In this document: piece by piece, positions 11,692 to 57,905 of the stretch
Position numbering within the stretch: position 1 is the stretch's first letter
Layout of the letters: every line of letters begins with the position of its first letter
Assembly (NCBI GenBank): GCA_907165135.1
Contig: OU015566.1
Location: 3,782,001 to 3,846,000 of the forward strand
DNA length: 64,000 bases
Direction of reading: 5' to 3'
Source of the DNA: Oikopleura dioica
Taxonomy: Eukaryota > Animalia > Chordata
Made by a program: the position numbers and the translations under genes
The notes under the pieces: generated by a model
What the model was told of the DNA's origin: nothing
Seen by the model: the letters and a program-made list of their open reading frames with translations, nothing else
Database searches by the model: none

Positions 11692-12820
11692 TTTCTGGTG
11701 ACTTTTGAACAGTTCGTTCGCTTTTTAAGGAGGGAAACAAAGATAAGGCAAATGTCAGAAGTCGTGCCGTTCCTACATAATTTTGATGACTTGGACATTT
11801 GTTCGGCAAAGGTCGGTCAAGTGCGCAACTACAGTAATAAGGGTCCGTTTTTTCATTATCTATGGAGACGATGAAGAAGCTCAACCCTCTGGTTTTTCTA
11901 TGAAGGCAATGCTCGTTCCACCGGAAACGACCGCGTCATCCCCAAGCGACAAATGTCAGCGGTTGCTCAACCAGGGTGGGCACACCCAAGGGCACGCATA
12001 CGTAACACTTTTTCTTCCTCGGTGACGTTCACACCGCACACACATTTTCACGCTTATCCGACTTTTAGGCACTGCTGACTCAATAATTAGTTGAAACAGG
12101 GGTTTTTTTATCCGTTTTCTTTTCCGAGAATTTCGAGTATTCTTAGGTTTAGGTTGGAGGTTGATGCGAATGGTCAATAATTTTTGCTAGGGTTTGACCT
12201 AGGGTTAGAGTTAGGGTTCAACTTCAAATCAGTCCATAAATATTTTATTTTGAAAAAAAATAATTATTAAAAAAAATAATTGCTGAAAAGATTATACTAA
12301 AAAAATAATTATTCAAAAAAAACATATTAAGATTTAAATAATTAAAAAAAATTATTAAAATATTAAAAAAATAATGAAAATTTTAGCTAAAATTTTAACG
12401 ATATTAATCTTTAGTCTTAGTTTTATAACAAAAAGTTCAGAAAAAATAATTTGACCAAAATGAGATGAATGAGAAAATGTGATAAAATGTGAGCTGAACG
12501 GAGGAAAATAGCGGTGATAAGAGGAGGTTTCGTGTGTTAAATTTGTTCCGGCAATTATGCCCGAGAAATTGGGCTGATTGAACAAATTCGCTTCGAGGTG
12601 CGCCGAGACCGTGTGTATCGGACAGAAAAGGCGACGGGCGGAAACGCTGCCACCACCACCAGACCGGGCTCAGGCGCGCCCTTCAGATCACGGCCAAAGA
12701 AAAACAAAAACTTTAAGAAAAAACGACAATAACACTCTCTAGAATCAACAAGAGAATAGTTCACGGCGAAAGTTGAAATCGGTAAGAACTGTACTGTACT
12801 GAAACAATCTTAAATTCGAC

Positions 12821-13034
12821 CCGGTTAACTCTAGAAAATCCCAAAAACCATTCAATTTGCATATCAATCGACTGGAAATTAACTTTTAAATAATTTTAAA
12901 CATGAACCGCGGTAAAACCGCCTGTTTAACTGCCCGGTTCGACCGCGGTTCATCGGTTAGTTGATTATGTTTTTAATTTCAAGTCGATTGATATCCATAT
13001 TGAGTGATTTTGGGGTTTTTATAGAGTTAACCGG
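12821..13034. mobile_element. Foldback (long imperfect palindrome) element in an intron upstream of the LARP6 coding region
   Basis: Arms CCGGTTAACTCTAGAAAATCCC...CATGAACCGCGGT and ACCGCGGTTCATC...GGGGTTTTTATAGAGTTAACCGG are imperfect reverse complements over about 95 bp. Confidence 0.75.
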
Positions 13035-13471
13035 AACGAACCGCATGGTTCACCGTGTGGTTCAATCGTGGTTGAACTTGGTTTTTGACTTTGTGCATCA
13101 TAAATCCGAATTTATTTTGAGCCTCTTCTGATAACGCAATAAATCATATTTCAAAACTGTACGAAACTTACACTTGATTGATTTCAGGGTTCTTATATTG
13201 CGTGAACTTGCCTTGGAGCAATTTCTGAGATTCCTAGAATCCGAACGTCCTGTCACGGGGAGAAGGAGACAAAAAGGCCACTACTCGCCGCGGCGGAACA
13301 AAGAACAACAACTCTCGACGTTCGGCCAAACAGACTTTTTTAAACCCTTTATCGCAACAAAAACGAAAAAGAGAGATAACGAAGCTGCAAGAAACAAGCA
13401 TCAGAAACAAGAAGATTGCCCTACATACTAAAGAGAACTTTGAAGAAAGAAAGACGATCCTTTTCTTTTGA

Positions 13472-15799
13472 ATGTCATATTATTATGGATACCCTTACGA
13501 TGGCGGATATACGATTTATACTCAAGGACCTCCTCCACCACCTCAAGGAAAATGTCAAAATGACATGTCTCCAGTTTGTTTTTTATTTTTTGGTTTAAAA
13601 AATGCGTTGTTTTTTTTATTTTATTTTGATTAAAATCTTTTTTATGGAAATTTAATAAAATTTATAAAAAATATATATTAATTTGGCAGATTCTCTTGTA
13701 TTATTTTTAGTTGAGTGGATACCCTTATTTTTCGTATTTTTTGACGCTCAAAAAGGCTTTCCCGTCCCACCACCTTACTATCCTCATCAACCTTATCCAA
13801 TGAGCCAGTTTGTCCCGACACCGACAGATTCAACTTCAGAAGCAAATTCTGAATGTTCAAGGTTTGAAACAGGCTTGCTGAAATAAACACTTGCTGACTG
13901 TTGTTTTTTGAAGTTCAAGCAACGGCGGTCTGCTGTGTACAAAGAAGCTGACGGAGAGCGTGCGTAAACTTTGCGAGGCGACTTTTTCGAACGCCGGCTT
14001 ATCCAGGGTAAGGGACACCGCAAGCGCATTGCCGCTGACTTTCAAATCCACAGATTTTCATTTTCTCAAGAACATCACATCTCACATGTGTCTCGAACGA
14101 CTTTTAGTGCTTCAGCTCTCTATTGAAAATTTGGCAACCGAAAATTTTTCAAGCTTTCTGTCATTTCGTTTGATTTTTCGAGGATAAATTGCTTATTTTT
14201 AGGAACCATACCTTGTCAAACAAATTGCAAGAACGACAGCTGGCTACATCTCGATCAAGCTTATCGCAAGCCTAAAGAAAATAAGAAAGATAACTAGGTC
14301 ACTTCAGGTAAGAAATATTATCAAAGATCAACGCTAGAATGGGGAGGTATCTGAAACCGACAAAAAAGTCGACAATTTTTACGTGGAAATTTTCGACCAA
14401 TCAGAAGCCCTGATTTTGCTTACAGTACTTACTTGGCCAGTCTGGCCAAGAGCAGCCGAGAAGCCGCCCACGCAAAATTTTTCGAAATTTTTTTGTCGGT
14501 TACTGTCGCCACCCCGCTAGAATGTCTGATAGAAAAGATAAGGAAAGTAATCATTAACAGATTTTAGATCTTGATCAATGCTCTGCGAGAAAGCGAAATT
14601 TTCGAAGTTTCTGAATGCTCCACCAAGGTAAAGTCCTTTTCTTATCAAGTCTTAAATTTTCAAAATTCAGGTGCGTCGAAAAGAACCGCTTCCGGAAACG
14701 CTGAAAGCAAAAAGATCGATCACGAGTGTGCTGGCCATCAATGTGGCGGAAGAAGACGCCGAAATAGAACGACTCTCGTCGCTGTTCAAAGAGTTTGGGA
14801 GAATTCAGCAAATGCGAATCGTCCCGCCCGATCGAAAATTGCCAGTTTACCTTCACGTGAGTCGACTTGTTTGACAGGCGCTTGTCGGCCAGAATTCAAC
14901 TGCTACTGCATTTTGTCAGCTTTAGCCTAGAAATCTTATTTTTTAAAGCTTGCCAGCGAACTCTAGAATAAACCGAATTGTTCAGGGATACGCGACACAA
15001 GTTCCAGAACTCGGGAAAGAAATCTGCGCGATTGTAGAATTTGAAAACGAAGAATCAGCGAAAAACGCGGTCGCTGGATTTTCAGAAAATGACCTTTCCC
15101 AGATGCGAGTGGCGTTACTTGGTCCCAAGCTCAGGCGCAATTTGTACCACGTTAACCATGACAGGTAAGAAAGTTCACATTCATTTCAGTCTCAGAAAGG
15201 GTTCATGATAAGGGGACTCGGGCCCAAAGAGGGTCCCCTTGGAGGCCCCTTAGGGGGTCAAGGTCAGGGTTAGGGTTAGGGTTAGAGTTAGAGTTAGGTT
15301 CGTTATTTTAAGGGGGTGCCTAACGAAAAACCTCCGATTTATGATTCTGATTGACAATTTTATTCCAGTTTTGAGGATGAAGAAAGCGAAGAGTTTCTAG
15401 TTTACTGACTAAAATGGAGTATATTTGTGCTTGCATTGAAATTTTTTACAAAAAATTTTCTGTTTCAAGAATTCAATCTCTCATTCCACCATTTTTTCTT
15501 GAGTTCTTTTGATAGAAAATTGCATTTTGAGTTATTTTTTACAAAATAAGGAGCGAACTAGCCCTCATTTATCTCAAGCATTGTTTAGGCGCTCTGGGAC
15601 CTCATCCTGCCAGTCGTCGATCATCTCCTCCCTCGATACGTCGCTAGAAGAGTGCCACATCACCGACACGATTGGCACCGACACCGACTCGGGCATCTTC
15701 TCGCCCCGCTCAAAAGCTGCAAATCAAGAGCAATCCACTTCTTCCAAAAATTTAACGCCCAGTAAAAAGGTAGAAACTGAAGAAAATTCAGAAGATTAG
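13472..15799 (+). CDS. LARP6: La-related protein 6 (LAM + RRM)
   Basis: LAM (FSNAGLSREPYLVKQIARTTAGYISIKLIASLKKIRKIT) and RRM (FKEFGRIQQMRIVPP...ICAIVEFENEESA...MRVALLGPK). Pro/Tyr-rich N-terminus. Confidence 0.85.
15263..15300 (+). repeat. Interstitial telomere-like TTAGGG/TTAGAG repeats in a LARP6 intron (similar degenerate tract at about 12188-12220)
   Basis: gtcagggttagggttagggttagagttagagttaggtt seen directly. Confidence 0.8.
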
Positions 15800-16791: not shown

Positions 16792-19700
16792 ATGAAAGGC
16801 GACAAAAACCCTGATGAAGCAAATTTATTTGATTGCTTTAAATTCCCCAAACCTATGAGAGATAGAAGCAAAAGAAGATCGTCTTCAAAAAGTATCGTCT
16901 CAAGTAAAGGAGTTCCTGAGTCTGTTGGCTGGATGGAGGTCATGTCGAAAGTTCGGTTAGTTTCTGCGAGGAAATGATCTTTTTCAGTTGATTTTAAGGG
17001 TTGAAAAGGCGGAAATAGAAGAAGTTGAAAAGGCTGAACCTGTGTGGGCTGAATTCTACATCGAAGAAAATGCGGAGATATACGACGATTTAGAAGTTGT
17101 ATATGAACGGGTTTTTCCTCAATAAAAAGGATAGCAGTCTGAAAGAAAGAAAAGCCTTCGAAAAGTCTGATATCAAAATTGAAAGTCTTCGTCGAAAACC
17201 GACTCGACGACAAAAATCATCGCCTCTCATCGACAACATGACGGAAAAACTCTTTGACAATATATTTGAAGGTATTTTCTTCCTTGATTTCAGCAAACTT
17301 ACTTTTCAGATTTTCTTCGATCCGAGACCTTGAAAAAAATCGACGAGTATGTCCAGGAACAGCCGGTTAGGCTGAAACCGATGAATTCGGTTGAAAACAG
17401 CTCGACAAATACAGAAACAGATTTGACGATCGAAAGCGATCCTACTTCTATTGAAACGACTTACAGAAAGTCGTCGGTAAAAGAACGGAGATCCTTAAGG
17501 GTGTACCAAGCGAAAAAAATCAAGTTTCATTCCGACCAAGATTGCTTGCTATAATTTTCGAATTCAAGCTTGGTAGACCCTTAAGTCGCCGAAACATCGA
17601 AACCCTTCGAAATTTTCTCAAAATTGAAGACGAAAAGTCACCATCAAGAATGAATGATGCTCAAATTGACGGATTCTCGAGCTCCGAGGAATCCTCCTTT
17701 CGATTCTTAAGGCCGGAAAGTCAATCAAAGAAGCCAAAGAAACGAAAAATTAAAAAGAAAAGAAGGGAAGATGCTGAAATTATCAAAAACACCCTTTCGG
17801 CGAAACCGTTTTTGAAAGTTCTCGTGAAGCATTTGTTGGCTCTCGAATAAGCTGCAAAAACTGAACACGGTCTTGCGTAGGAAAAAGTACTGGTATATTT
17901 GTAGTGCTCCGAGAAGCGAGCGAGAACGAAGTGTGTAAAAGTGGCAGCGCGCTCCGCATAAATACGTTGCGCGAGAAAAACATGAAAACAAGATAGAATC
18001 AGGATCGGCTTTTTTCGTGAACCACAACAGCCCCCCAGACGATGATGATTCTAGGGTGATGAGTAGAGTTGACTGGGCGCGCTGCGCAGGTTTTGAGCAC
18101 GAGCACGGTGATTCGGAAGAGAAGAAGCAGGCGATCAGGGTGAAATTGTAGAAGAAGAGAACTAGAGATAAGTTGTAAGTGTAGATTTACCAGGGCGAGA
18201 GCTGGATTTGGAGTTGTAGAGAGAAGCCAGGTAGCGGCGAGATTGAGAGAAGTCAGGATTGCCAGGGCAGTAGCTGGGCTTGTAGATGTAGAGGCAAGTA
18301 GTACCAGGGCTAGAGCTGGGTTTGAAGAGCGGTGAGGATTGCCAGGAGTAGGGCTGGTCTTGGTAGATTTGAGTAGTAGTGCCAGGGCTTGAGCTGGGCT
18401 TGGTGAGAGTTGATTGAGGTTGAGGAGGTTGCCAGGGCGAGTGCTGGGCTTGGAAGAGAGAGGTGTGCCAGGACGAAAACTGGGCTTAGAAGTTGAGATT
18501 GTAGTTGTCAAAGTAGTTGACGTAGTAATTGTCGGAGTTGTAGTTGAGAGTCTGCGAAGTCGATCAGCTGAGTTTCGTGCGTCTTGAGTCGAGCGCAGGG
18601 TAGAGATGAGAGACAGGAGAAGCGAGCGAAGGATGCATCGTACCCCCCGAGCTGAGGACGAGCAGAGAGTTGAGTTGAGAAGAGAGGAGTAGTATTTGTA
18701 GTTGTTAGTATTTATATGAATTGGTGAAGAGGTGAAGAGATTAAAATTTTTTTTGTAGTTTCGGCGATCAAAATCATGTCAGTAGAGTTGAGCGGAGGTC
18801 AAACTGTTAAGTTGAAGATGGCGGGAAGATCTCTCGCGAGATTTAAGTTGAACTTGAGTGGCGATGTGGCCAGGACTCGAAGATTGAGAGAAGATCGCTC
18901 GTGAGATCGACGTTGGCGATTTTGATGCAGAGTGCCGTTTGAGATGTGAGGTTTTGGCGGGAGATTTCCATGTGTCAACGGAGAAAGGAGTTGAGGGGAG
19001 GTCGAACGCGTTGAAACTGACGTTGACGGCGTTGAGCACGAGAAAATCGAGGTAAGTGGCTCAGACGGTTGAACTACCTTTTTAGGGCACTCTTTATGTG
19101 CCGAAAACTCGACACGAGTAAAGAGTGACGCGCGTACGCGGTTTGATTCATGCGCCAGCTAACAGTAAACCAGCGAGAGAGAGGTTGTTGTCGTAGCCAA
19201 CGTTGAGCGCAAGGAAACAACGGCGGGGATGTCCAGAGGTGGCCAGGTGACGTTCGTTCTCTACCAGCGAAGAGTAGACGAGATTCCAACAATAAAAAAT
19301 CGAAGTTTTTTAGATGAAGGGCGAGGGTTCTAGTAGTCCTGGTACCATTTATGTTGGCTCTCGAATAAGCTGCAAAAACTGAACACGGTTCTTGCGTAGA
19401 GAAAACTGGTATATTTTGTAGTGCTCCGAGAAGCGAGCGAGAACGAAGTGTGTAAAAGTGGCAGCGCGCTCCGCATAAATACGTTGCGCGAGAAAAACAT
19501 GAAAACAAGATAGAATCAGGATCGGCTTTTTTCGTGAACCACAACACATTCCTCAAAAGAAGCACTTCAGTAAGTTTTTCTTCTTTTCGAAACTTTTTTG
19601 AGTGGAATTCTAGCGTGGAAATAGAAGATGATGAGCTTTATGAAATGCTGCTTAGTCGAGGAACAGCCGATGAAGATCTTACAGAAAAACTATCCAACTG

Positions 19701-20225
19701 CACTGTTCTCGCTGAAAATCTCAATAACAGGTTTGTTCTTTATCGAGAAATGATTGACAAAACGGTCATTTGAGGCTACAAAAATTGAATGAAAACCTCG
19801 ACAAGCAGTTGGCCCAAGAGCCAGTTGATGCAAAAGAAAATAAGAAACAGCTTGAGCCGTATAGAACTCCCAGGTATTCCTTATTGAGGTAGCCGTTTAA
19901 GCTTCTCTCAAACTTCAGTCCTACTAAATTCGTCGTGCCAAAGACAGCCAAGCCAATTCGTTCCTTATCCGTTCCTGGCTCCTATCTTCGACCTTCCAAG
20001 AAGAAAGGTAAGATAATCAATCAAATAAATCCACAAATCCGTCCTCTAGAAATCATGCCCGACAACGACTACTATGAAGAAGACCAAACTCCGCTCAACT
20101 CCGAGCTCACCCTGCTCTCCTCCTTCACCGACTGTAATCGACCCGCTAGTCATTCGCTTTCAGACATTTCATCGCGCGTCTCTGTCCGAGATCTCCGTCG
20201 AAAATTTGAAAAATCTGCTGAATAA
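16792..20225 (+). CDS. Unknown multi-exon Ser/Lys-rich protein, interrupted by the LTR element
   Basis: ORF segments flank the insertion. Removing the element and one CATT restores ...KVLVKHSSKEAL, then a GTAAGT intron, then HVEIEDDELYEML... The gene ends SVRDLRRKFEKSAE*. The 5' exons are not fully resolved. Confidence 0.5.
17834..19546 (-). mobile_element. Non-autonomous LTR retroelement (1713 bp; TRIM/LARD-like)
   Basis: About 195-bp direct repeats at 17834-18029 and 19352-19546 with TG...CA ends and a 4-bp TSD (CATT). On the minus strand, a PBS-like TGGTACCAGGA follows the 5' LTR and a G6 PPT precedes the 3' LTR. No gag/pol similarity recognised. Confidence 0.93.
18190..18487 (-). repeat. 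Repeat-spacer array of 20-nt hairpin motifs inside the LTR element
   Basis: Seven copies of CCAGGRC-N4-GCTGGGCTT-like motif (+ strand) at 18190, 18262, 18304, 18342, 18382, 18432 and 18468, plus a partial copy at about 18227, separated by non-identical spacers. Confidence 0.85.
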
Positions 20226-20239
20226 GATTTCAAAAAGTT

Positions 20240-20311
20240 TGACCCCTACGTGATTCGAACACGCAACCTTCTGATCTGGAGTCAGACGCGCTACCGTTGC
20301 GCCAAGGAGTC
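20240..20311 (-). tRNA. trnW-CCA: tRNA-Trp (CCA)
   Basis: GACTCCTTGGCGCAACGGTAGCGCGTCTGACTCCAGATCAGAAGGTTGCGTGTTCGAATCACGTAGGGGTCA: cloverleaf, CCA anticodon, A/B boxes, downstream T5 terminator. Confidence 0.97.
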
Positions 20312-20454
20312 AGCTGACAGCGCCGCTCCTTGGTGCAAATATATCGGCAATAGATGCATGCTTGTATTGGTTGAATGAGTCATTTCGAAACGCAAAATTC
20401 AAACAAGAAAGAATCCATTGAAAAACGCAGGGAACGAGAAAGTACCTAGAGAGA

Positions 20455-23488: not shown

Positions 23489-24333
23489 TTAAAAGAAATT
23501 TTGCGGAAGTAGGAGCAGAAATGAGGCTTTGTTCATCAGACAAAGTTCGCAGTCTTCATCATTTGCTTGTTTCCAAGTTTAAAATATCCAAATTAATTGC
23601 GGTTTTCAAAATGAGGAATATTTTTTAAACTTGCATAAAGATTGCCAACGCCTCGTTTTTTCTTCGTCAGGACTTGGCGGGCCAGTTCTTTTCGAATTTG
23701 ATCGTACCACATCCATGTTGATAAGAAGCCAGCGTCAGCTTGAAATTTCGGTAGATTAATTTATTCAACTGATACTTACAATTTGGTGCTTTTTGCATGC
23801 CAAAAGATTCTGTCATCAAATTGCTCAAGCATTCTGAAAATGATATTAAAAAATATGCAATATTCAAGCGCTTCTAGGGTTACTAGTAAAAAGTCCACTA
23901 CTATTCTGAATAGTCTCTTCACTCGACAGGCCGTGGACACCCTAAAAGACTGTGCTCGGCAACCTGTGGAGAAAACCTGAGTCAGGGTCTCGAATAGCTG
24001 AGATGAAAAGCCGCGCAGCGGTTTTTTTAAAAACGAAGCCGCAAAGCGGCTTCGCGAATACTACCTATGGTACCTTACAATCTAGAAAAATTTCTAGCGA
24101 ATTCTAGCTGCGCGGATTTTCATATCAGCTCTTTCCAACCCTGACTCAGGTTTTCTACACAGGTTGCCGAGCCCATCTTAAGGAGGTGAAGCACCCCCTG
24201 AAAAATGATGAGAAAATGCCTTCAATGTCTCTAGGTCACCTAAGTCATCGCAATTATCAATTGCCTCTCTCGTAATTTTCGCATCAGCAAATCCCGTCAT
24301 CGAAGCAATAAAGACCACCCATATCGTTTTCAT
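23489..24333 (-). CDS. Small secreted precursor with KKKR basic site (prohormone-like)
   Basis: Signal peptide MKTIWVVFIASMTGFADA. Exons 24333-24240, 23833-23780 and 23738-23632 are joined by phase-matched GT-AG introns. The C-terminus is either unspliced (stop at 23593) or a further exon to 23489. Confidence 0.65.
23954..24172. mobile_element. MITE family 1 (CCTGAGTCAGG-bearing TIR), intronic copy
   Basis: 35-bp TIR GCTCGGCAACCTGTGGAGAAAACCTGAGTCAGGGT, 1 mismatch between ends; internal GCCGC-NNN-GCGGC hairpins. Confidence 0.85.
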
Positions 24334-24745: not shown

Positions 24746-25423
24746 TTAGTTTTGAATAAAAACAGAGAGAGACGAAATTATGGAAAGATTATTTTGTTGT
24801 TTATTGTTGCTGACTTGAGAACTCGTGTACAGAACGTGAAAGTAAATTATCATTTCTTTGGGGACAGAGCTGTCAAATTTCAGATTTTTTGAAGAAGGAT
24901 TTTTAATATCCCTGGGGGACTTGGTCGGAGACTTGTGGAGCCTGGTTGGAGATTTGTTCAATTTGAGTGGAGTTCTGGGGAACTTGGTTGTCGTCTTGGG
25001 GAGTTGATCGGAGACTTGGGGGACCTGGTCGGAAGTTTGTGGGAACTGGTTGGAGATCTGCTCGATTTGAGTGGAGTTTTGTGGAACTTGAGTGTCGTCC
25101 TGGGGGTATTGGTCAGAGACTTGTGGGACCTGGTCGGAGACTTGTGGGAGTTGGTTGGAGACCTGAGCAGTCTGGTTGGTTTCCTGAGCGACCTGGTCGG
25201 AGACCTGAGGAAGCTGGTCAGAGACTTGTGGGAGCTGGTTGGACACCTGGGCGTATTGGTCGGAAACCTGAGCGGTCTGGTTGGTTTCCTGAGCGACTTG
25301 GTCGGAGACCTGAGGAACCTGGTTCGTGACCTGGGGAACTTGGTCGGAGACTTGCTCGGTCTGGGTATCGTTGGTGGGGTAGGCGGAGACGACGGCGAAG
25401 GTGAAGACGGAGAAAAGCTTCAT
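24746..25423 (-). CDS. Secreted Gln-rich protein with 7-residue QVSDQVP repeats (3' end unresolved)
   Basis: Signal peptide MKLFSVFTFAVVSA followed by about 20 heptad repeats. An apparent 1-nt deletion in a C-run near 25000 shifts the frame in the middle of a repeat. Confidence 0.7.
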   Translation of the reverse strand: MKLFSVFTFAVVSAYPTNDTQTEQVSDQVPQVTNQVPQVSDQVAQETNQTAQVSDQYAQVSNQLPQVSDQLPQVSDQVAQETNQTAQVSNQLPQVSDQVPQVSDQYPQDDTQVPQNSTQIEQISNQFPQTSDQVPQVSDQLPKTTTKFPRTPLKLNKSPTRLHKSPTKSPRDIKNPSSKNLKFDSSVPKEMIIYFHVLYTSSQVSNNKQQNNLSIISSLSVFIQN

Positions 25424-36573: not shown

Positions 36574-38668
36574 TCAAAAAAGTTTGACAAGCAGCAAAGA
36601 AAGGATAGAAAAGATTGAAAAAGAAGCAGCTGAGCTGGTCACTTCTTTTGCTGTTGTCGGTTTTTTCGTCGTTGTTGTCGTAGTTGGCGGCGCTGTTGTC
36701 GTAATTTCGCAGAGTCCAGCTTCAAGTTGATCAAAATTTATTTTTTGTTTTCCGTGCATTTTGCTTTGAAAGGTTTTTTAAGAAAAAAGGGGTTATTTTT
36801 CCGTATCAATTTTAAATTTACAATTGATTGACTTTTGTCTCTTTTGAAACCTTTCCTTTCGTATTCTCCGTTAAGAGCTTCGCATCTTTTATGAATCTCG
36901 GTCAAATCGTCGAGAGCTTTTTTCATTGCCTCATCCATGTTGTATTCTTTGATGAACCTGTTAAAATATTTAGAAAAAATGACAAACCTCCATAATCTTT
37001 TGCTACTCCGTAATTCAGATTGTAGTAATTTGAAAAGCTAGATGAAACATCATCACACATGGCAAATGTGTTGTAGTCGACGCTTGATGTAATTTGCGAA
37101 GAGTAATAAGCCTTGTCCTCGGTCATATCAAACTCTGTCTCGTTTTCTGCTTCTCGATCTAAACAATATTGTACATTAGAAATATCACCGCCTTACCATC
37201 AACAGGAGATGTATTGTTCATCGCCTCTTCATCCGACTTCGCATACCAATTTTCTGTAGAAGTACTCATTGTTGTCGTACTGATTGTTGTCGTACTGCCG
37301 TAGTCAACGGTTGAGTAGGAGCTGTAGTCACTGTAAGAGTAGGAACTGTAAGAGCTGTACGAAGAGTAATCTTTGAAAGGGATCCATTATTTTTAAATAA
37401 TTATTAGTCAAATTATGATAAATTTGATCAAATGAATAATCCCTTTGCAGAGGAGTACCAATCTGAGTCGTAATAAGACGAGTAAGATCCGTAATACGAA
37501 GAGTACGATCCATATGAAGAATAAGAGCCAGCATTTTCCCAATAATAGGAGGAGGAAGAACCATAATACGCAGAATACGAGCTATAATAGGAAGAATATG
37601 AGCCATATGACGAGTAGGAGCCATAATATGAAGAATATGAGCCATAATACGACGAATACGAAGAATAATCGTAACTATAAGAAGAGGAGTCGTAATAGCT
37701 GGAGTCGTAGTATGACGAGTAGGAGCTGTAATATGAAGAGTAGGAGCCGTAGTAAGACGAACATGAAGACCCGTAATAAGAAGAATAAGAATCATAATAG
37801 GAAGAATAATAAGATGAGTATGAACCATAATAGGATGAATACGAGCCATAATAAGACGAGTATGATCCATAATAGGAAGAATAATAAGACGAATAAGAAC
37901 CGTAGTATGACGAGTAAGAACCATAGTATGAGGAGTAGGAACCGTAGTATGACGAGTAAGAGCCATAATAGGAGGAATAATAACTTGAATATGACGAGGA
38001 CGACCCATAACTTGAATACGAGTCTAGCCAAGAATATGATTCATATGAGCTAAGCCCAGATGAGCTGTAATAGGAGGAGTCGTCCATACAGACAAAGGGA
38101 ATATATTCGCCGTCAATCCATGTTCCGATCGGAGATACTTTTTCGTCCGTCTCCGCAGTCCTTGATGAAGAGTCAGGACACTCGATGGAAGAAGTAGCGG
38201 ACGAATAGTTGGGGGAATAAAGGGAACAGGTATCGCTCGTATAACTTGAGTATCCATATGGATTGCTGAATGGATTCGCCAGCTTGCTACTTTTAGCTAT
38301 CGGTTTTGCTGTTTTCTGGAAGGAAGAGCCATAATAGCTGGAGAAGCCGCAATCTTTTCAAAGCTTTGAAAATCTTGAACCTTAAAAAATTTTCACTATC
38401 TTTTTTAGCTTTTTCCTGATGGACACTGAGACATTCCAGCCGACGGATAACTAGATCCTCCCGCTCCAAAGAGACCTAGAACGATTTTTATGAATGATTT
38501 CAAACTCTGATCAATCTTACCATTTCCATTGAGACTTTGGTCAACCTCATTGCAGAATTGCTCATTCAGTTCAATTTTCTCAACATCAACACATGCAATT
38601 TTCGGAAGTGGAGGGCCAGGAGGCGCTTGCGAAAATACAATCGCCAAAAAATGAAAGCGGAGAATCAT
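36574..38668 (-). CDS. Secreted, probably GPI-anchored Tyr/Ser-rich repeat protein
   Basis: Signal peptide MILRFHFLAIVFSQA; about 200 aa of SSYYGSY repeats (37428-38087); Thr-rich stalk; tail TSSAASFSIFSILSLLLVKLF*. Confidence 0.75.
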
Positions 38669-49635: not shown

Positions 49636-50988
<1,353 letters not shown>

Positions 50989-56089: not shown

Positions 56090-57905
56090 TTAATTTGCTT
56101 GTCGTATAATTTTTGATTTCAGCATCAGGATCACCCGTCCAGGGAAAAATCATGCGCTTCCATGTTGAGTGGCAGAATATGCAGCAAGTAAGGTTCGCAA
56201 GAGCATCGATTACATAACCGTTGTTGACGAAGACGATTGGTTTCGTGTCTTGGAAGGTTATCTTTAACCTGGATATTTCCTTGATTTCAGTTATAACATG
56301 TTGTTTTTGCTTGAAATTGAATTATCCAGTCATAAAAGAGAATGCAGCATAAATCTGTGACTGTGCAGCAAGTCGCTAGAATCGTACATCGTCTCAAAAG
56401 TCGATACATGCCTTCTTGCTGAAGAGGATTCGTCGCGGAAATGTGCTTCGGATGCAATTTCAAGGGATAGAGAAACAGGAAGAGAAGGAGGGATTGAATA
56501 AAGACCATCGATCCAAGTCCAAGCTACAAATTGAAAAATGAGCTTTTGGACATTTCGAGACATCTAGATACATCTCAAGACATCTCAAGACATCTAAGAA
56601 CATCTTAAGACATCTGAGAAGATTTGCATACATCAAAACAAATCTCTGTGATAGAGGGACATCAAAAGACATCTTAGGACATCTCTAGACATCCAAAGAC
56701 ATCCAAGGACATTCTAAGACATCTTAAGACATTTCTTCATCTATTCAATGATTATCTCACCCATAAGCTCCATTCATCATCGTCCTGGAAACAGATTCCT
56801 TCGAAATATCCATTTTCCTTCCGTTTACCACAAATGATCACTTTTGGGTCGAAGAAATGAGGCGCTACAGTGATATTCGAAGCAGTAACAACAAAAATGA
56901 TCGCTGCCAAAGTGAACTTGTTCAGTTTCCGGGACCATTCGGGAAAGTTGTCGGAGAGAATCGGATCCTGGTAGAATTTATTTTGACGAAGCCAGAGAAA
57001 CAGGTAGATGAAGTAGAAAGTCGTGATGAAAATGACGTTACTGTTCTTTGGCTTCAAAAATAATTTCGGATTTTGGGAATTTCGAAAAAGGTTGAAGCAT
57101 GCCTGGCTAATCTTCTCGGTCACCCGGCATTTTAAATGACTCATGTTTTGTTGGTAGTTTGACCAGACGAGGAAGGAGCATAGAATGATGTCGAGGAAGG
57201 AGACAAGGAGGAGTAAGGCGAAAGAAACGCGCCGTAGTTTTGGTTTGAAAGGACTTTCATGAGATCATAAGAGTTATATAACATTAGTTGGGACATGTTA
57301 GGGACATTTAAAGACATTTTAATACATCTAGGGATATCTTCAGACATCTAGAGACATTTGAAGACATCTAGAGACATCTGAAGACATCTAGAGACATTCA
57401 AAGACATCTGGATACATCCAAAGACATCTGGATACATCCAAAGACATTTATCGACGTTGTTATCTTTTCCATTAAAAATGTTTTCTGATCTCAATCCTGA
57501 ATTCTCCAAATCTAAAAGAATAAACCGACAACGCACAAAACAGATAAATCGCGATAATAAGGCTCACCCCTGCAATATTGCCGGAAACAATCTAAAACAA
57601 CTCAAAATGTAAAAGATCCAAAATTATGTGATTCCAACCTGTTCAACTTTATGATCTCTGTATTGAGTAAAATTTCCTTCCTGATCCCAGCAAAATTGTT
57701 CCAAGCTTTCATTTTTCATTTTCATTTCTCGTTTTTTCCCGTTTTTTTTGGAATTTATTTGAAGAACAAGTATTGAAAGAACCGCTGAATAAGAAAAGTA
57801 AGTGACAAGTGCATCGATTCGAAATTGAATTAAAGCCGCTTGTGAGCTTTTATCTTTTTTATTCGTGTCTCTGAAAGATTCTGAATGTGCTGCGGCCTGG
57901 GGCAC
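56090..57905 (-). CDS. Multi-pass (7TM-like) membrane protein, lineage-specific; borders approximate
   Basis: Successive hydrophobic exons (VIFITTFYFIYLFLW; FTLAAIIFVVTASNI; VFIQSLLLFLFLYPL; CTILATCCTVTDLCCIL; DALANLTCCIF..WKRMIFPW). Confidence 0.5.
56555..56740. repeat. 10-bp minisatellite (AGACATCYNA), copy 1
   Basis: Tandem gacatct units in an intron. Confidence 0.85.
57285..57432. repeat. 10-bp minisatellite, copy 2
   Basis: Same unit and orientation as at 56555-56740. Confidence 0.85.

What the first reader, a model, noticed from the sequence alone, without database searches (positions are those of the whole stretch)
18190..18487. CRISPR-like repeat-spacer hairpin array inside a eukaryotic non-autonomous LTR element
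Seen: seven copies (plus one partial) of a 20-nt motif. On the element strand it reads AAGCCCAGC-N4-GYCCTGG, a CCAG/CTGG stem with a 9-nt loop, separated by different C/A/T-rich spacers. Start-to-start distances are 72, 42, 38, 40, 50 and 36 nt. Three of these are not multiples of 3, so the motif changes reading frame and is conserved at nucleic-acid level rather than as peptide. A TATAAATA on the element strand (18716-18709) lies about 220 nt upstream. Inference: an RNA scaffold of repeated protein-binding or processing stem-loops (packaging or multimerised Gag-binding sites, or a small-RNA precursor), possibly expressed from an internal promoter. It is not a true CRISPR: no cas genes, and repeats are degenerate.
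Basis: partly seen in the sequence, partly recalled or inferred. Interest (0 to 1): 0.85.

Follow-up and report, generated by a model that had tools for sequence, protein, structure and literature searches.

The report
Degenerate tandem repeat in LTR element
Seven look-alike 20-base motifs sit in the non-coding tail of a small gene-less retrotransposon of the tunicate Oikopleura dioica; they are a decaying tandem duplication of a kind common in such elements, and the tools give almost no support for the proposed RNA hairpin scaffold.

Summary
Seven copies of a 20-nt core (CCAG-N8-CTGG plus flanks) lie at 18190-18487, against 0.16 expected by chance. They sit inside a 1,713-bp gene-less LTR element (17834-19546, sense strand minus) with 196/195-bp LTRs, TG..CA ends and a 4-bp target duplication. 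The window is Oikopleura dioica (Okinawa), chromosome record OU015566.1.

The CRISPR-like picture is overstated. Alternate spacers are related to each other, and TRF finds a 78-nt double unit and a 36-nt unit. This is a degenerate higher-order tandem repeat.

The hairpin reading has little support:
- The array RNA folds no better than shuffles (z +1.09 on the element strand).
- Single units fold at -3.4 to -5.5 kcal/mol, within the shuffle range.
- The four stem pairs never vary, so they cannot be tested. One closing pair is G-C in five copies and A-U in two, which is only a hint.

No Rfam, Pfam or PDB match was found, and no true protein relative. The one protein hit is a bacterial repeat protein.

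Best reading: a minisatellite in the 3' non-coding part of a non-autonomous LTR retrotransposon, ordinary for such elements. I did not fetch other copies or the autonomous partner, and have referred that step.

The parts
17834..19546 (-). Whole gene-less LTR element, 1,713 bp, sense strand minus
   Evidence: Direct repeats at both ends. Length and flanks. No ORF with a family match.
17830..17833 (.). Left copy of the 4-bp target-site duplication (CATT)
   Evidence: the same four bases directly flank both ends of the element.
17834..18029 (-). 3' LTR on the element strand (196 bp, TG...CA ends)
   Evidence: 192 of 198 aligned columns are identical to the other LTR (1 mismatch, 5 gap columns). 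132 nt are 100% identical.
18030..18041 (-). Polypurine-tract-like run (six G on the minus strand) next to the 3' LTR
   Evidence: Read (sequence after the left LTR). The assignment as a PPT is inferred.
18030..19351 (-). Internal domain, 1,322 bp, non-coding, G-poor on the sense strand
   Evidence: 8-15% G and 33-43% C on the minus strand over 18134-19033; only short ORFs, none with a Pfam match; no Rfam match worth the name.
18190..18487 (-). The array: seven copies of the 20-nt core plus one partial copy. A degenerate higher-order tandem repeat.
   Evidence: copies. (TRF periods 78 x1.9 at 80% and 36 x1.9 at 81%). (related spacers). (folding and pair counts).
18709..18716 (-). TATAAATA on the element strand, about 220 nt upstream of the array
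   Evidence: Its function was not tested.
19337..19347 (-). Primer-binding-site-like stretch beginning TGG, 4 nt after the 5' LTR on the minus strand
   Evidence: Read (sequence before the right LTR). No cognate tRNA was identified. The only tRNA in the window (Trp) does not fit by eye.
19352..19546 (-). 5' LTR on the element strand (195 bp)
19547..19550 (.). Right copy of the 4-bp target-site duplication (CATT)

Best explanation
The array is a short, decaying minisatellite. A unit of roughly 36-42 nt was duplicated head to tail, one 78-nt double unit was duplicated again, and small insertions, deletions and substitutions have since blurred the copies. It lies in the 3' non-coding part of the internal domain of a 1,713-bp non-autonomous LTR retrotransposon of Oikopleura dioica, about 150 nt upstream of the polypurine-like run and the 3' LTR on the sense (minus) strand. 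Shown: the element's anatomy, the tandem and higher-order structure, the related spacers, and the lack of stable or co-varying hairpins. Inferred: the origin by slippage or template switching during replication or reverse transcription, as proposed for the tandem-repeat regions in the 3' untranslated part of plant Tat/Ogre elements (PMC7004042). Also inferred: if the better-kept 20-nt core is recognised by anything, it is recognised by its sequence (as C-rich single-stranded RNA or as duplex DNA), not through a stable stem-loop.
For: Tandem structure: TRF reports periods of 78 nt (1.9 copies, 80% matches) and 36 nt (1.9 copies, 81%). Alternate spacers are related (pairs 1-3 and 2-4, z 2.8 and 2.7). 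Between the two 78-nt units the spacers are 66% identical and the cores 80% identical. Similar minisatellites are frequent in this window and in this genome (1.4-2.6 Mb of tandem repeats). Element anatomy. No coding capacity or known RNA. Hairpins are not favoured. The stem is invariant. Short tandem arrays in the 3' untranslated region of LTR retrotransposons are a described, common feature (PMC7004042).
Against: The core is kept better than the spacers, most clearly between adjacent sub-units (18/21 against 11/22 identical columns). CCAG and CTGG stay exactly 8 nt apart in 7/7 copies, even where the 8 nt between them differ at 6 of 8 positions between two copies. One pair that would close the stem across a one-base bulge is G-C in 5 copies and A-U in 2. 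These hint at some constraint on the core, whether hairpin, paired half-sites or former reading frame. Only one copy of the element could be studied.
Confidence: 0.55

Rival explanations
1. On the element's RNA each core forms a small stem-loop, and the row of stem-loops binds a protein repeatedly (packaging or Gag binding) or is processed into small RNAs, perhaps from an internal promoter.
For: CCAG/CTGG is complementary and invariant in 7/7 copies with fixed 8-nt spacing. A closing pair is G-C in 5 copies and A-U in 2. Only 14 of 500 shuffles reach that count, a control that related copies can exceed without any structure. A TATAAATA lies upstream on the same strand. Some Tor elements of this species do have an internal promoter (PMC4402516).
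Against: The stem is 4 bp with an 8-nt loop. Units fold at -3.4 to -5.5 kcal/mol, and 29-97 of 200 shuffles fold as well. The array RNA has z +1.09 on the element strand, and the hairpin row is absent from its minimum-energy fold. The consensus fold is -3.6 kcal/mol. Invariant pairs carry no information. The two co-varying copies belong to the same spacer sub-type, so one ancestral copy may account for both. No Rfam family matches.
Confidence: 0.15
2. The cores are duplex-DNA binding sites for a host factor, clustered as an internal enhancer- or insulator-like module. This would resemble the row of Su(Hw) sites in the Drosophila gypsy element (established knowledge), or the internal regulatory sequences inferred for Tor elements.
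For: A short conserved core, more variable spacers and a fixed half-site distance are what binding-site clusters look like. Tissue-specific Tor expression depends on sequences inside the elements (PMC4402516).
Against: No factor is known and no binding data are at hand. The core occurs nowhere else in the 64-kb window. The strong strand asymmetry of the whole internal domain is not explained by this reading.
Confidence: 0.15
3. The array is the decayed remnant of a Ser/Thr/Pro-rich protein-coding repeat, from a gene of a full-length element or a captured host gene.
For: Each copy was read in its own frame on the minus strand. Residue 1 is Lys in 7/7 copies. Residue 2 is Pro in 5, Thr in 1 and Ser in 1. 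Residue 3 is Ser in 7/7, residues 4-5 vary, residue 6 is Pro in 7/7 and residue 7 is Gly in 7/7. Of the four variable sites in the five conserved codons, three are silent third positions. The 78- and 36-nt periods are multiples of three.
Against: The copies lie in two frames (4 + 3), and one frame has 2 stops within the array. The open frames are expected from composition alone, because a G-poor strand lacks TAG and TGA. There is no Pfam or PDB match. Two word-based searches found no homologue. These see only proteins of 0.55-1.75 times the query length, so they say nothing of longer or shorter kin. The one hit of the exhaustive search is a bacterial protein with a 12-residue repeat, a short-repeat coincidence. 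With only four variable sites, the third-position excess is not significant (about 0.08 by my hand count).
Confidence: 0.08

Closest known systems
Tandem-repeat regions in the 3' untranslated part of LTR retrotransposons (plant Tat/Ogre lineage; PMC7004042 and the work it cites)
   Same: A short head-to-tail array with variable unit length inside the element, downstream of where genes would lie and upstream of the polypurine tract and 3' LTR. No coding role.
   Different: This is an animal (tunicate) element, gene-less and far smaller. There are only seven copies. Variation between element copies was not examined here.
TRIM, and the larger LARD class, of non-autonomous LTR retrotransposons (PMC6934838, PMC3532108)
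   Same: Terminal direct repeats of 100-250 bp, an internal domain bounded by a PBS-like and a PPT-like stretch, and no genes.
   Different: At 1,713 bp it exceeds the size limit of under 1,000 bp quoted for TRIMs, and it is far below LARD size. Copy number and partner are unknown.
Tor elements of Oikopleura dioica (Ty3/gypsy-like, some with env; PMC4402516)
   Same: Same host. LTR retroelements dominate this assembly's repeats. Some Tor classes have an internal promoter and internal regulatory sequences.
   Different: No gag, pol or env remnant is detectable here. Sequence kinship with any Tor element was not tested, because fetching one was left out.
Su(Hw) binding-site array of the Drosophila gypsy element (established knowledge, not tested here)
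   Same: A row of short conserved cores separated by variable spacers inside the transcribed, non-coding part of an LTR element.
   Different: The gypsy array lies in the 5' untranslated region and its binding protein is known. Here the array is in the 3' part and no binding is shown.
CRISPR arrays
   Same: The superficial repeat-spacer look.
   Different: The host is a eukaryote and there are no cas genes. The repeats are 20 nt and degenerate. The spacers measure 16-52 nt and are related to one another.

Membership tests
LTR retrotransposon, non-autonomous | Two direct terminal repeats with TG...CA ends | tested here: met
   196 and 195 bp, 192/198 columns identical, starting TG and ending CA.
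LTR retrotransposon, non-autonomous | Short target-site duplication flanking the element | tested here: met
   The same 4 bp lie on both sides.
LTR retrotransposon, non-autonomous | Primer binding site next to the 5' LTR and polypurine tract next to the 3' LTR | tested here: inconclusive
   On the minus strand a TGG-initiated stretch lies 4 nt after the LTR, and a run of six G abuts the other LTR. No matching tRNA was identified. The plus-strand orientation fits worse.
LTR retrotransposon, non-autonomous | No gag/pol coding capacity | tested here: met
   Only short ORFs, and none matches Pfam at E up to 1.
LTR retrotransposon, non-autonomous | Several genomic copies and an autonomous partner sharing LTR and PBS | not tested
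   There is only one copy in the window.
TRIM | Total length under about 1,000 bp with terminal repeats of 100-250 bp (definition in PMC6934838) | tested here: not met
   The repeats fit at 196/195 bp, but the element is 1,713 bp.
CRISPR array | Prokaryotic genome with near-identical repeats and unrelated spacers of regular length | tested here: not met
   The host is a tunicate. The cores carry 0-3 mismatches. The spacers are 16-52 nt and pairwise related.
Array of structured RNA stem-loops (packaging or protein-binding scaffold) | Stem-loops more stable than composition predicts | tested here: not met
   Units have z -0.05 to -1.13. The array has z +1.09 on the element strand and -1.69 on the other strand.
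Array of structured RNA stem-loops (packaging or protein-binding scaffold) | Compensatory changes that keep the pairs | tested here: inconclusive
   The four stem pairs never vary. One closing pair is G-C in 5 copies and A-U in 2, and those copies are probably related by descent.
Array of structured RNA stem-loops (packaging or protein-binding scaffold) | The array is transcribed on the element strand | not testable with these tools
Tandem-repeat region of LTR retrotransposon untranslated parts | Head-to-tail repeats in the non-coding part next to the 3' LTR | tested here: met
   TRF periods of 78 and 36 nt. The array ends about 150 nt from the PPT-like run.
Tandem-repeat region of LTR retrotransposon untranslated parts | Array length and units vary between copies of the element | not tested
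   This needs other copies, and that step was left out.
Protein-coding peptide repeat | All copies in one open frame, with homologous proteins | tested here: not met
   The copies lie in two frames. No family or true homologue was found, within the length limits of the word-based searches.
Known RNA families (Rfam), including ribozyme- or 5S-bearing non-autonomous LTR elements | A match to a curated covariance model | tested here: not met
   The only match at gathering score in the window is tRNA-Trp, outside the element. Inside the element there are only chance-level hits at E 0.15 and 1.9.

The most novel reading that the evidence does not exclude
The 20-nt core is a selected recognition module that a gene-less LTR element of Oikopleura carries in seven copies. 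It would attract a protein supplied in trans: a particle protein of an autonomous Tor-like element acting on the RNA, or a host factor acting on the DNA as an internal enhancer or insulator. The fixed 8-nt half-site spacing and the one co-varying closing pair would be its footprints.
Probability: 0.12. Interest if true: 0.55.

Novelty: new member of a known kind. Interest (0 to 1): 0.22.

Why it matters
As it stands, little. Small non-autonomous LTR elements and tandem repeats in their non-coding parts are both well known, and this genome is rich in minisatellites. Two points give it modest value. First, non-autonomous LTR elements have rarely been described in animals, and I found none described for O. 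dioica in the papers searched. Second, the insertion looks young (near-identical LTRs, intact target duplication) and abuts open frames of a host gene in one of the most compact animal genomes. It may therefore be a useful presence/absence marker. If the core proved to be a selected binding module, it would offer a way to see how gene-less elements are recognised in this species.

Tried and rejected
1. CRISPR: rejected. The host is a eukaryote, the repeats are degenerate and the spacers are related.
2. Stable hairpin array: not supported by single-unit, whole-array or consensus folds.
3. Known RNA family, including the ribozyme- or 5S-type cargo seen in some non-autonomous LTR elements: none found.
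4. Coding remnant: no Pfam hit, no PDB hit, and two word-based protein searches were blank. Those searches see only proteins of 0.55-1.75 times the query length, so they say nothing of longer or shorter kin.
5. The exhaustive search gave one hit, P0001, with an identical 7-residue stretch at the same 12-residue period. I rejected it as kin. Its E-value sums 11 repeated stretches of one short motif. Relatives of its C-terminal domain include a hypothetical protein of the planctomycete Candidatus Uabimicrobium amorphum. Its contig is not on record, so its DNA could not be compared.
6. The bacterial promoter/terminator scan is irrelevant to a eukaryote.
7. The two large inverted repeats elsewhere in the window are not related to each other.
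8. Plus-strand orientation of the element: rejected. No TGG follows the left LTR, and no purine run abuts the right one.

Full report
WHERE THE WINDOW COMES FROM. An exact look-up of the window's intron-less actin gene (49852-50988) places the window on NCBI assembly GCA_907165135.1, record OU015566.1, a 14.5-Mb chromosome. Two papers name that assembly as Oikopleura dioica from Okinawa. It is a tunicate, not human.

THE OBSERVATION. Reading the sequence and a pattern search confirm seven copies of a 20-nt core, all within 18190-18487 on one strand. Shuffles of the window give 0.16 on average and never more than 2. Three of the six are not multiples of three, and the copies fall in two reading frames (4 + 3). 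Seven of the eight CCAG-N8-CTGG sites in the window are these copies. The loop is 8 nt, not 9. A partial copy that keeps one half lies between the first two copies. TATAAATA is present at 18709-18716 on the minus strand. The octamer occurs 8 times in the window, so by itself it is weak evidence for a promoter.

THE ELEMENT.
- Direct repeats of 196 and 195 bp lie at 17834-18029 and 19352-19546. They start TG and end CA, and 192 of 198 aligned columns are identical: 1 mismatch and 5 gap columns, with 132 nt identical without a break.
- The same four bases flank both ends.
- On the minus strand, a stretch starting TGG lies 4 nt after the right-hand repeat, and a run of six G abuts the left-hand repeat. 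On the plus strand neither feature is found.
- The 1,322-bp internal domain has only short ORFs, none with a Pfam match at E up to 1, and no Rfam match beyond chance level.
- This is a gene-less LTR retrotransposon of 1,713 bp. That is too long for the usual TRIM definition of under 1,000 bp and far smaller than a LARD.
- The near-identical LTRs and the intact duplication suggest a recent insertion. The few LTR differences are mostly single-base gaps, which may be errors of a nanopore-based assembly (inference).

WHAT THE ARRAY IS.
- Tandem Repeats Finder reports a 78-nt period (1.9 copies, 80% matches, 8% indels) over 18255-18402, and a 36-nt period (1.9 copies, 81%) over 18425-18492.
- The six spacers are 16-52 nt. 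Alternate spacers resemble each other (1 with 3, 2 with 4; z 2.8 and 2.7 against shuffles).
- Between the two 78-nt units the spacers are 66% identical and the cores 80%. Between adjacent sub-units the cores are kept better than the spacers (18/21 against 11/22, 15/20 against 18/30 and 16/20 against 11/17 identical columns).
- The array is therefore a degenerate higher-order tandem repeat with a better-kept core, not a set of repeats separated by unrelated spacers.
- Comparable minisatellites are common in this window. The genome paper reports 1.4-2.6 Mb of tandem repeats.

THE HAIRPIN TEST.
- On the element strand, the seven units fold at -3.4 to -5.5 kcal/mol with z-scores of -0.05 to -1.13. 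Between 29 and 97 of 200 shuffles fold at least as well.
- The 321-nt array RNA folds at -41.6 kcal/mol against -45.5 for its shuffles (z +1.09). Its minimum-energy structure does not contain the row of hairpins.
- The opposite strand gives z -1.69.
- The four CCAG/CTGG pairs are identical in all seven copies, so they are uninformative.
- RNAalifold gives -3.6 kcal/mol for the consensus and adds one closing pair across a one-base bulge. That pair is G-C in five copies and A-U in two.
- This is the only positive hint for pairing. The two copies concerned belong to the same spacer sub-type, so a single ancestral copy may explain both changes. The same two changes are also silent third-position changes in the peptide reading. 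I count it as a hint, not evidence.

THE CODING TEST. Read in its own frame on the minus strand, each copy gives Lys (7/7); then Pro 5, Thr 1 and Ser 1; then Ser (7/7); two variable residues; Pro (7/7); and Gly (7/7). Three things weaken this.
- The sense strand of the internal domain is G-poor (8-15% G, 33-43% C over 18134-19033). TAG and TGA are therefore rare, and long open frames arise from composition alone. The array has 0, 2 and 0 stops in the three minus-strand frames, against 11, 6 and 3 on the plus strand.
- The copies use two frames.
- No protein family, solved structure or homologue matches either open frame. The word-based searches see only proteins of 0.55-1.75 times the query length, so their blanks say nothing of longer or shorter kin.

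The exhaustive search of one frame returned one protein, P0001 (E 1.1e-10, 11 stretches). It has about 25 copies of a 12-residue repeat whose first seven residues equal one array copy. Relatives of its C-terminal domain include a hypothetical protein of a planctomycete, so it is bacterial. The score is the sum of one short motif repeated on both sides. I treat it as coincidence. Its DNA could not be compared.

MOST LIKELY MECHANISM. I commit, at about 0.55, to a minisatellite. It would have formed by slippage or template switching in the 3' non-coding part of the element, as proposed for the tandem-repeat regions in the 3' untranslated part of plant Tat/Ogre elements, and it would have no hairpin role. 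The better-kept core, the fixed 8-nt spacing and the single co-varying pair leave room for constraint on the core. Two copies differ at 6 of the 8 inner positions and still keep that spacing. Three rivals remain:
- a stem-loop or RNA-binding row (0.15);
- a duplex-DNA binding-site cluster like the gypsy Su(Hw) row, plausible because Tor expression depends on internal sequences (0.15);
- a decayed coding repeat (0.08).

WHAT I LEFT OUT.
- I did not fetch other copies of this element or its autonomous partner by pattern scan, look-up or accession. The likely partner belongs to the Tor family, which the literature calls endogenous retroviral.
- Open frames of the plus strand abut both ends of the element.

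- Early in my reasoning, before the host was identified, I noted which neighbouring copies share a frame. That amounts to placing a frame change. I did not carry it into notes or this report.
- In my reasoning I also recalled from memory some tRNA 3' ends, yeast LTR ends and transcription-factor consensus strings.
- I read by eye, in thought only, how the host frames would continue across the insertion and a guessed intron. I offer it only as the lead in Noticed in passing.
- My notes and scripts list coordinates of repeat copies and spacers, not of stops or frame changes.

VERDICT. This is an ordinary kind of feature in a new, small LTR element.

Noticed in passing
window 17542-17850 and 19534-19773 (+): Open frames on the plus strand run into the left LTR and out of the right LTR, so the element seems to sit antisense in or next to a coding exon of a host gene. 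No Pfam family matches either piece. The pieces were not joined.
   Followed up: partly
window 20239-20312 (-): A tRNA-Trp (CCA) gene, the only tRNA in the window, lies about 690 nt from the element's right LTR. Its 3' end does not fit the PBS-like stretch by eye.
   Followed up: partly
window 18134-19033 (-): The sense strand of the element's internal domain is strongly G-poor and C-rich (8-15% G, 33-43% C), against about 20% each in the window. A is not raised, so this is not a G-to-A hypermutation pattern. It remains unexplained.
   Followed up: partly
window 15262-15298: An interstitial run of six telomere-type hexamers (GGTTAG register), about 2.5 kb from the element.
   Followed up: no
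window 24746-25423 (-): An ORF of 225 aa built of 21-nt (7-residue) tandem repeats with 84-105-nt higher-order periods. It has only weak coiled-coil-type Pfam hits.
   Followed up: no
window 37328-38087: Repeats of 21, 42 and 75 nt, with ORFs of about 200-226 aa open on both strands and no Pfam family.
   Followed up: no
window 56549-56732, 57303-57447 and 9092-9320: Two arrays of a 10-nt GACATCTAAA-type unit about 600 nt apart, and a TTGTCAAA-type array with 21-51-nt periods.
   Followed up: no
window 12815-13040 and 23951-24175: Two inverted repeats with arms of about 68 nt and 87-90 nt between the arms. They are not related to each other and could be small foldback elements.
   Followed up: partly
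P0001 (protein from an ENA metagenome contig): A secreted-looking bacterial protein with about 25 copies of a 12-residue repeat and a C-terminal domain shared with a Candidatus Uabimicrobium amorphum hypothetical protein. No Pfam family matches.
   Followed up: partly
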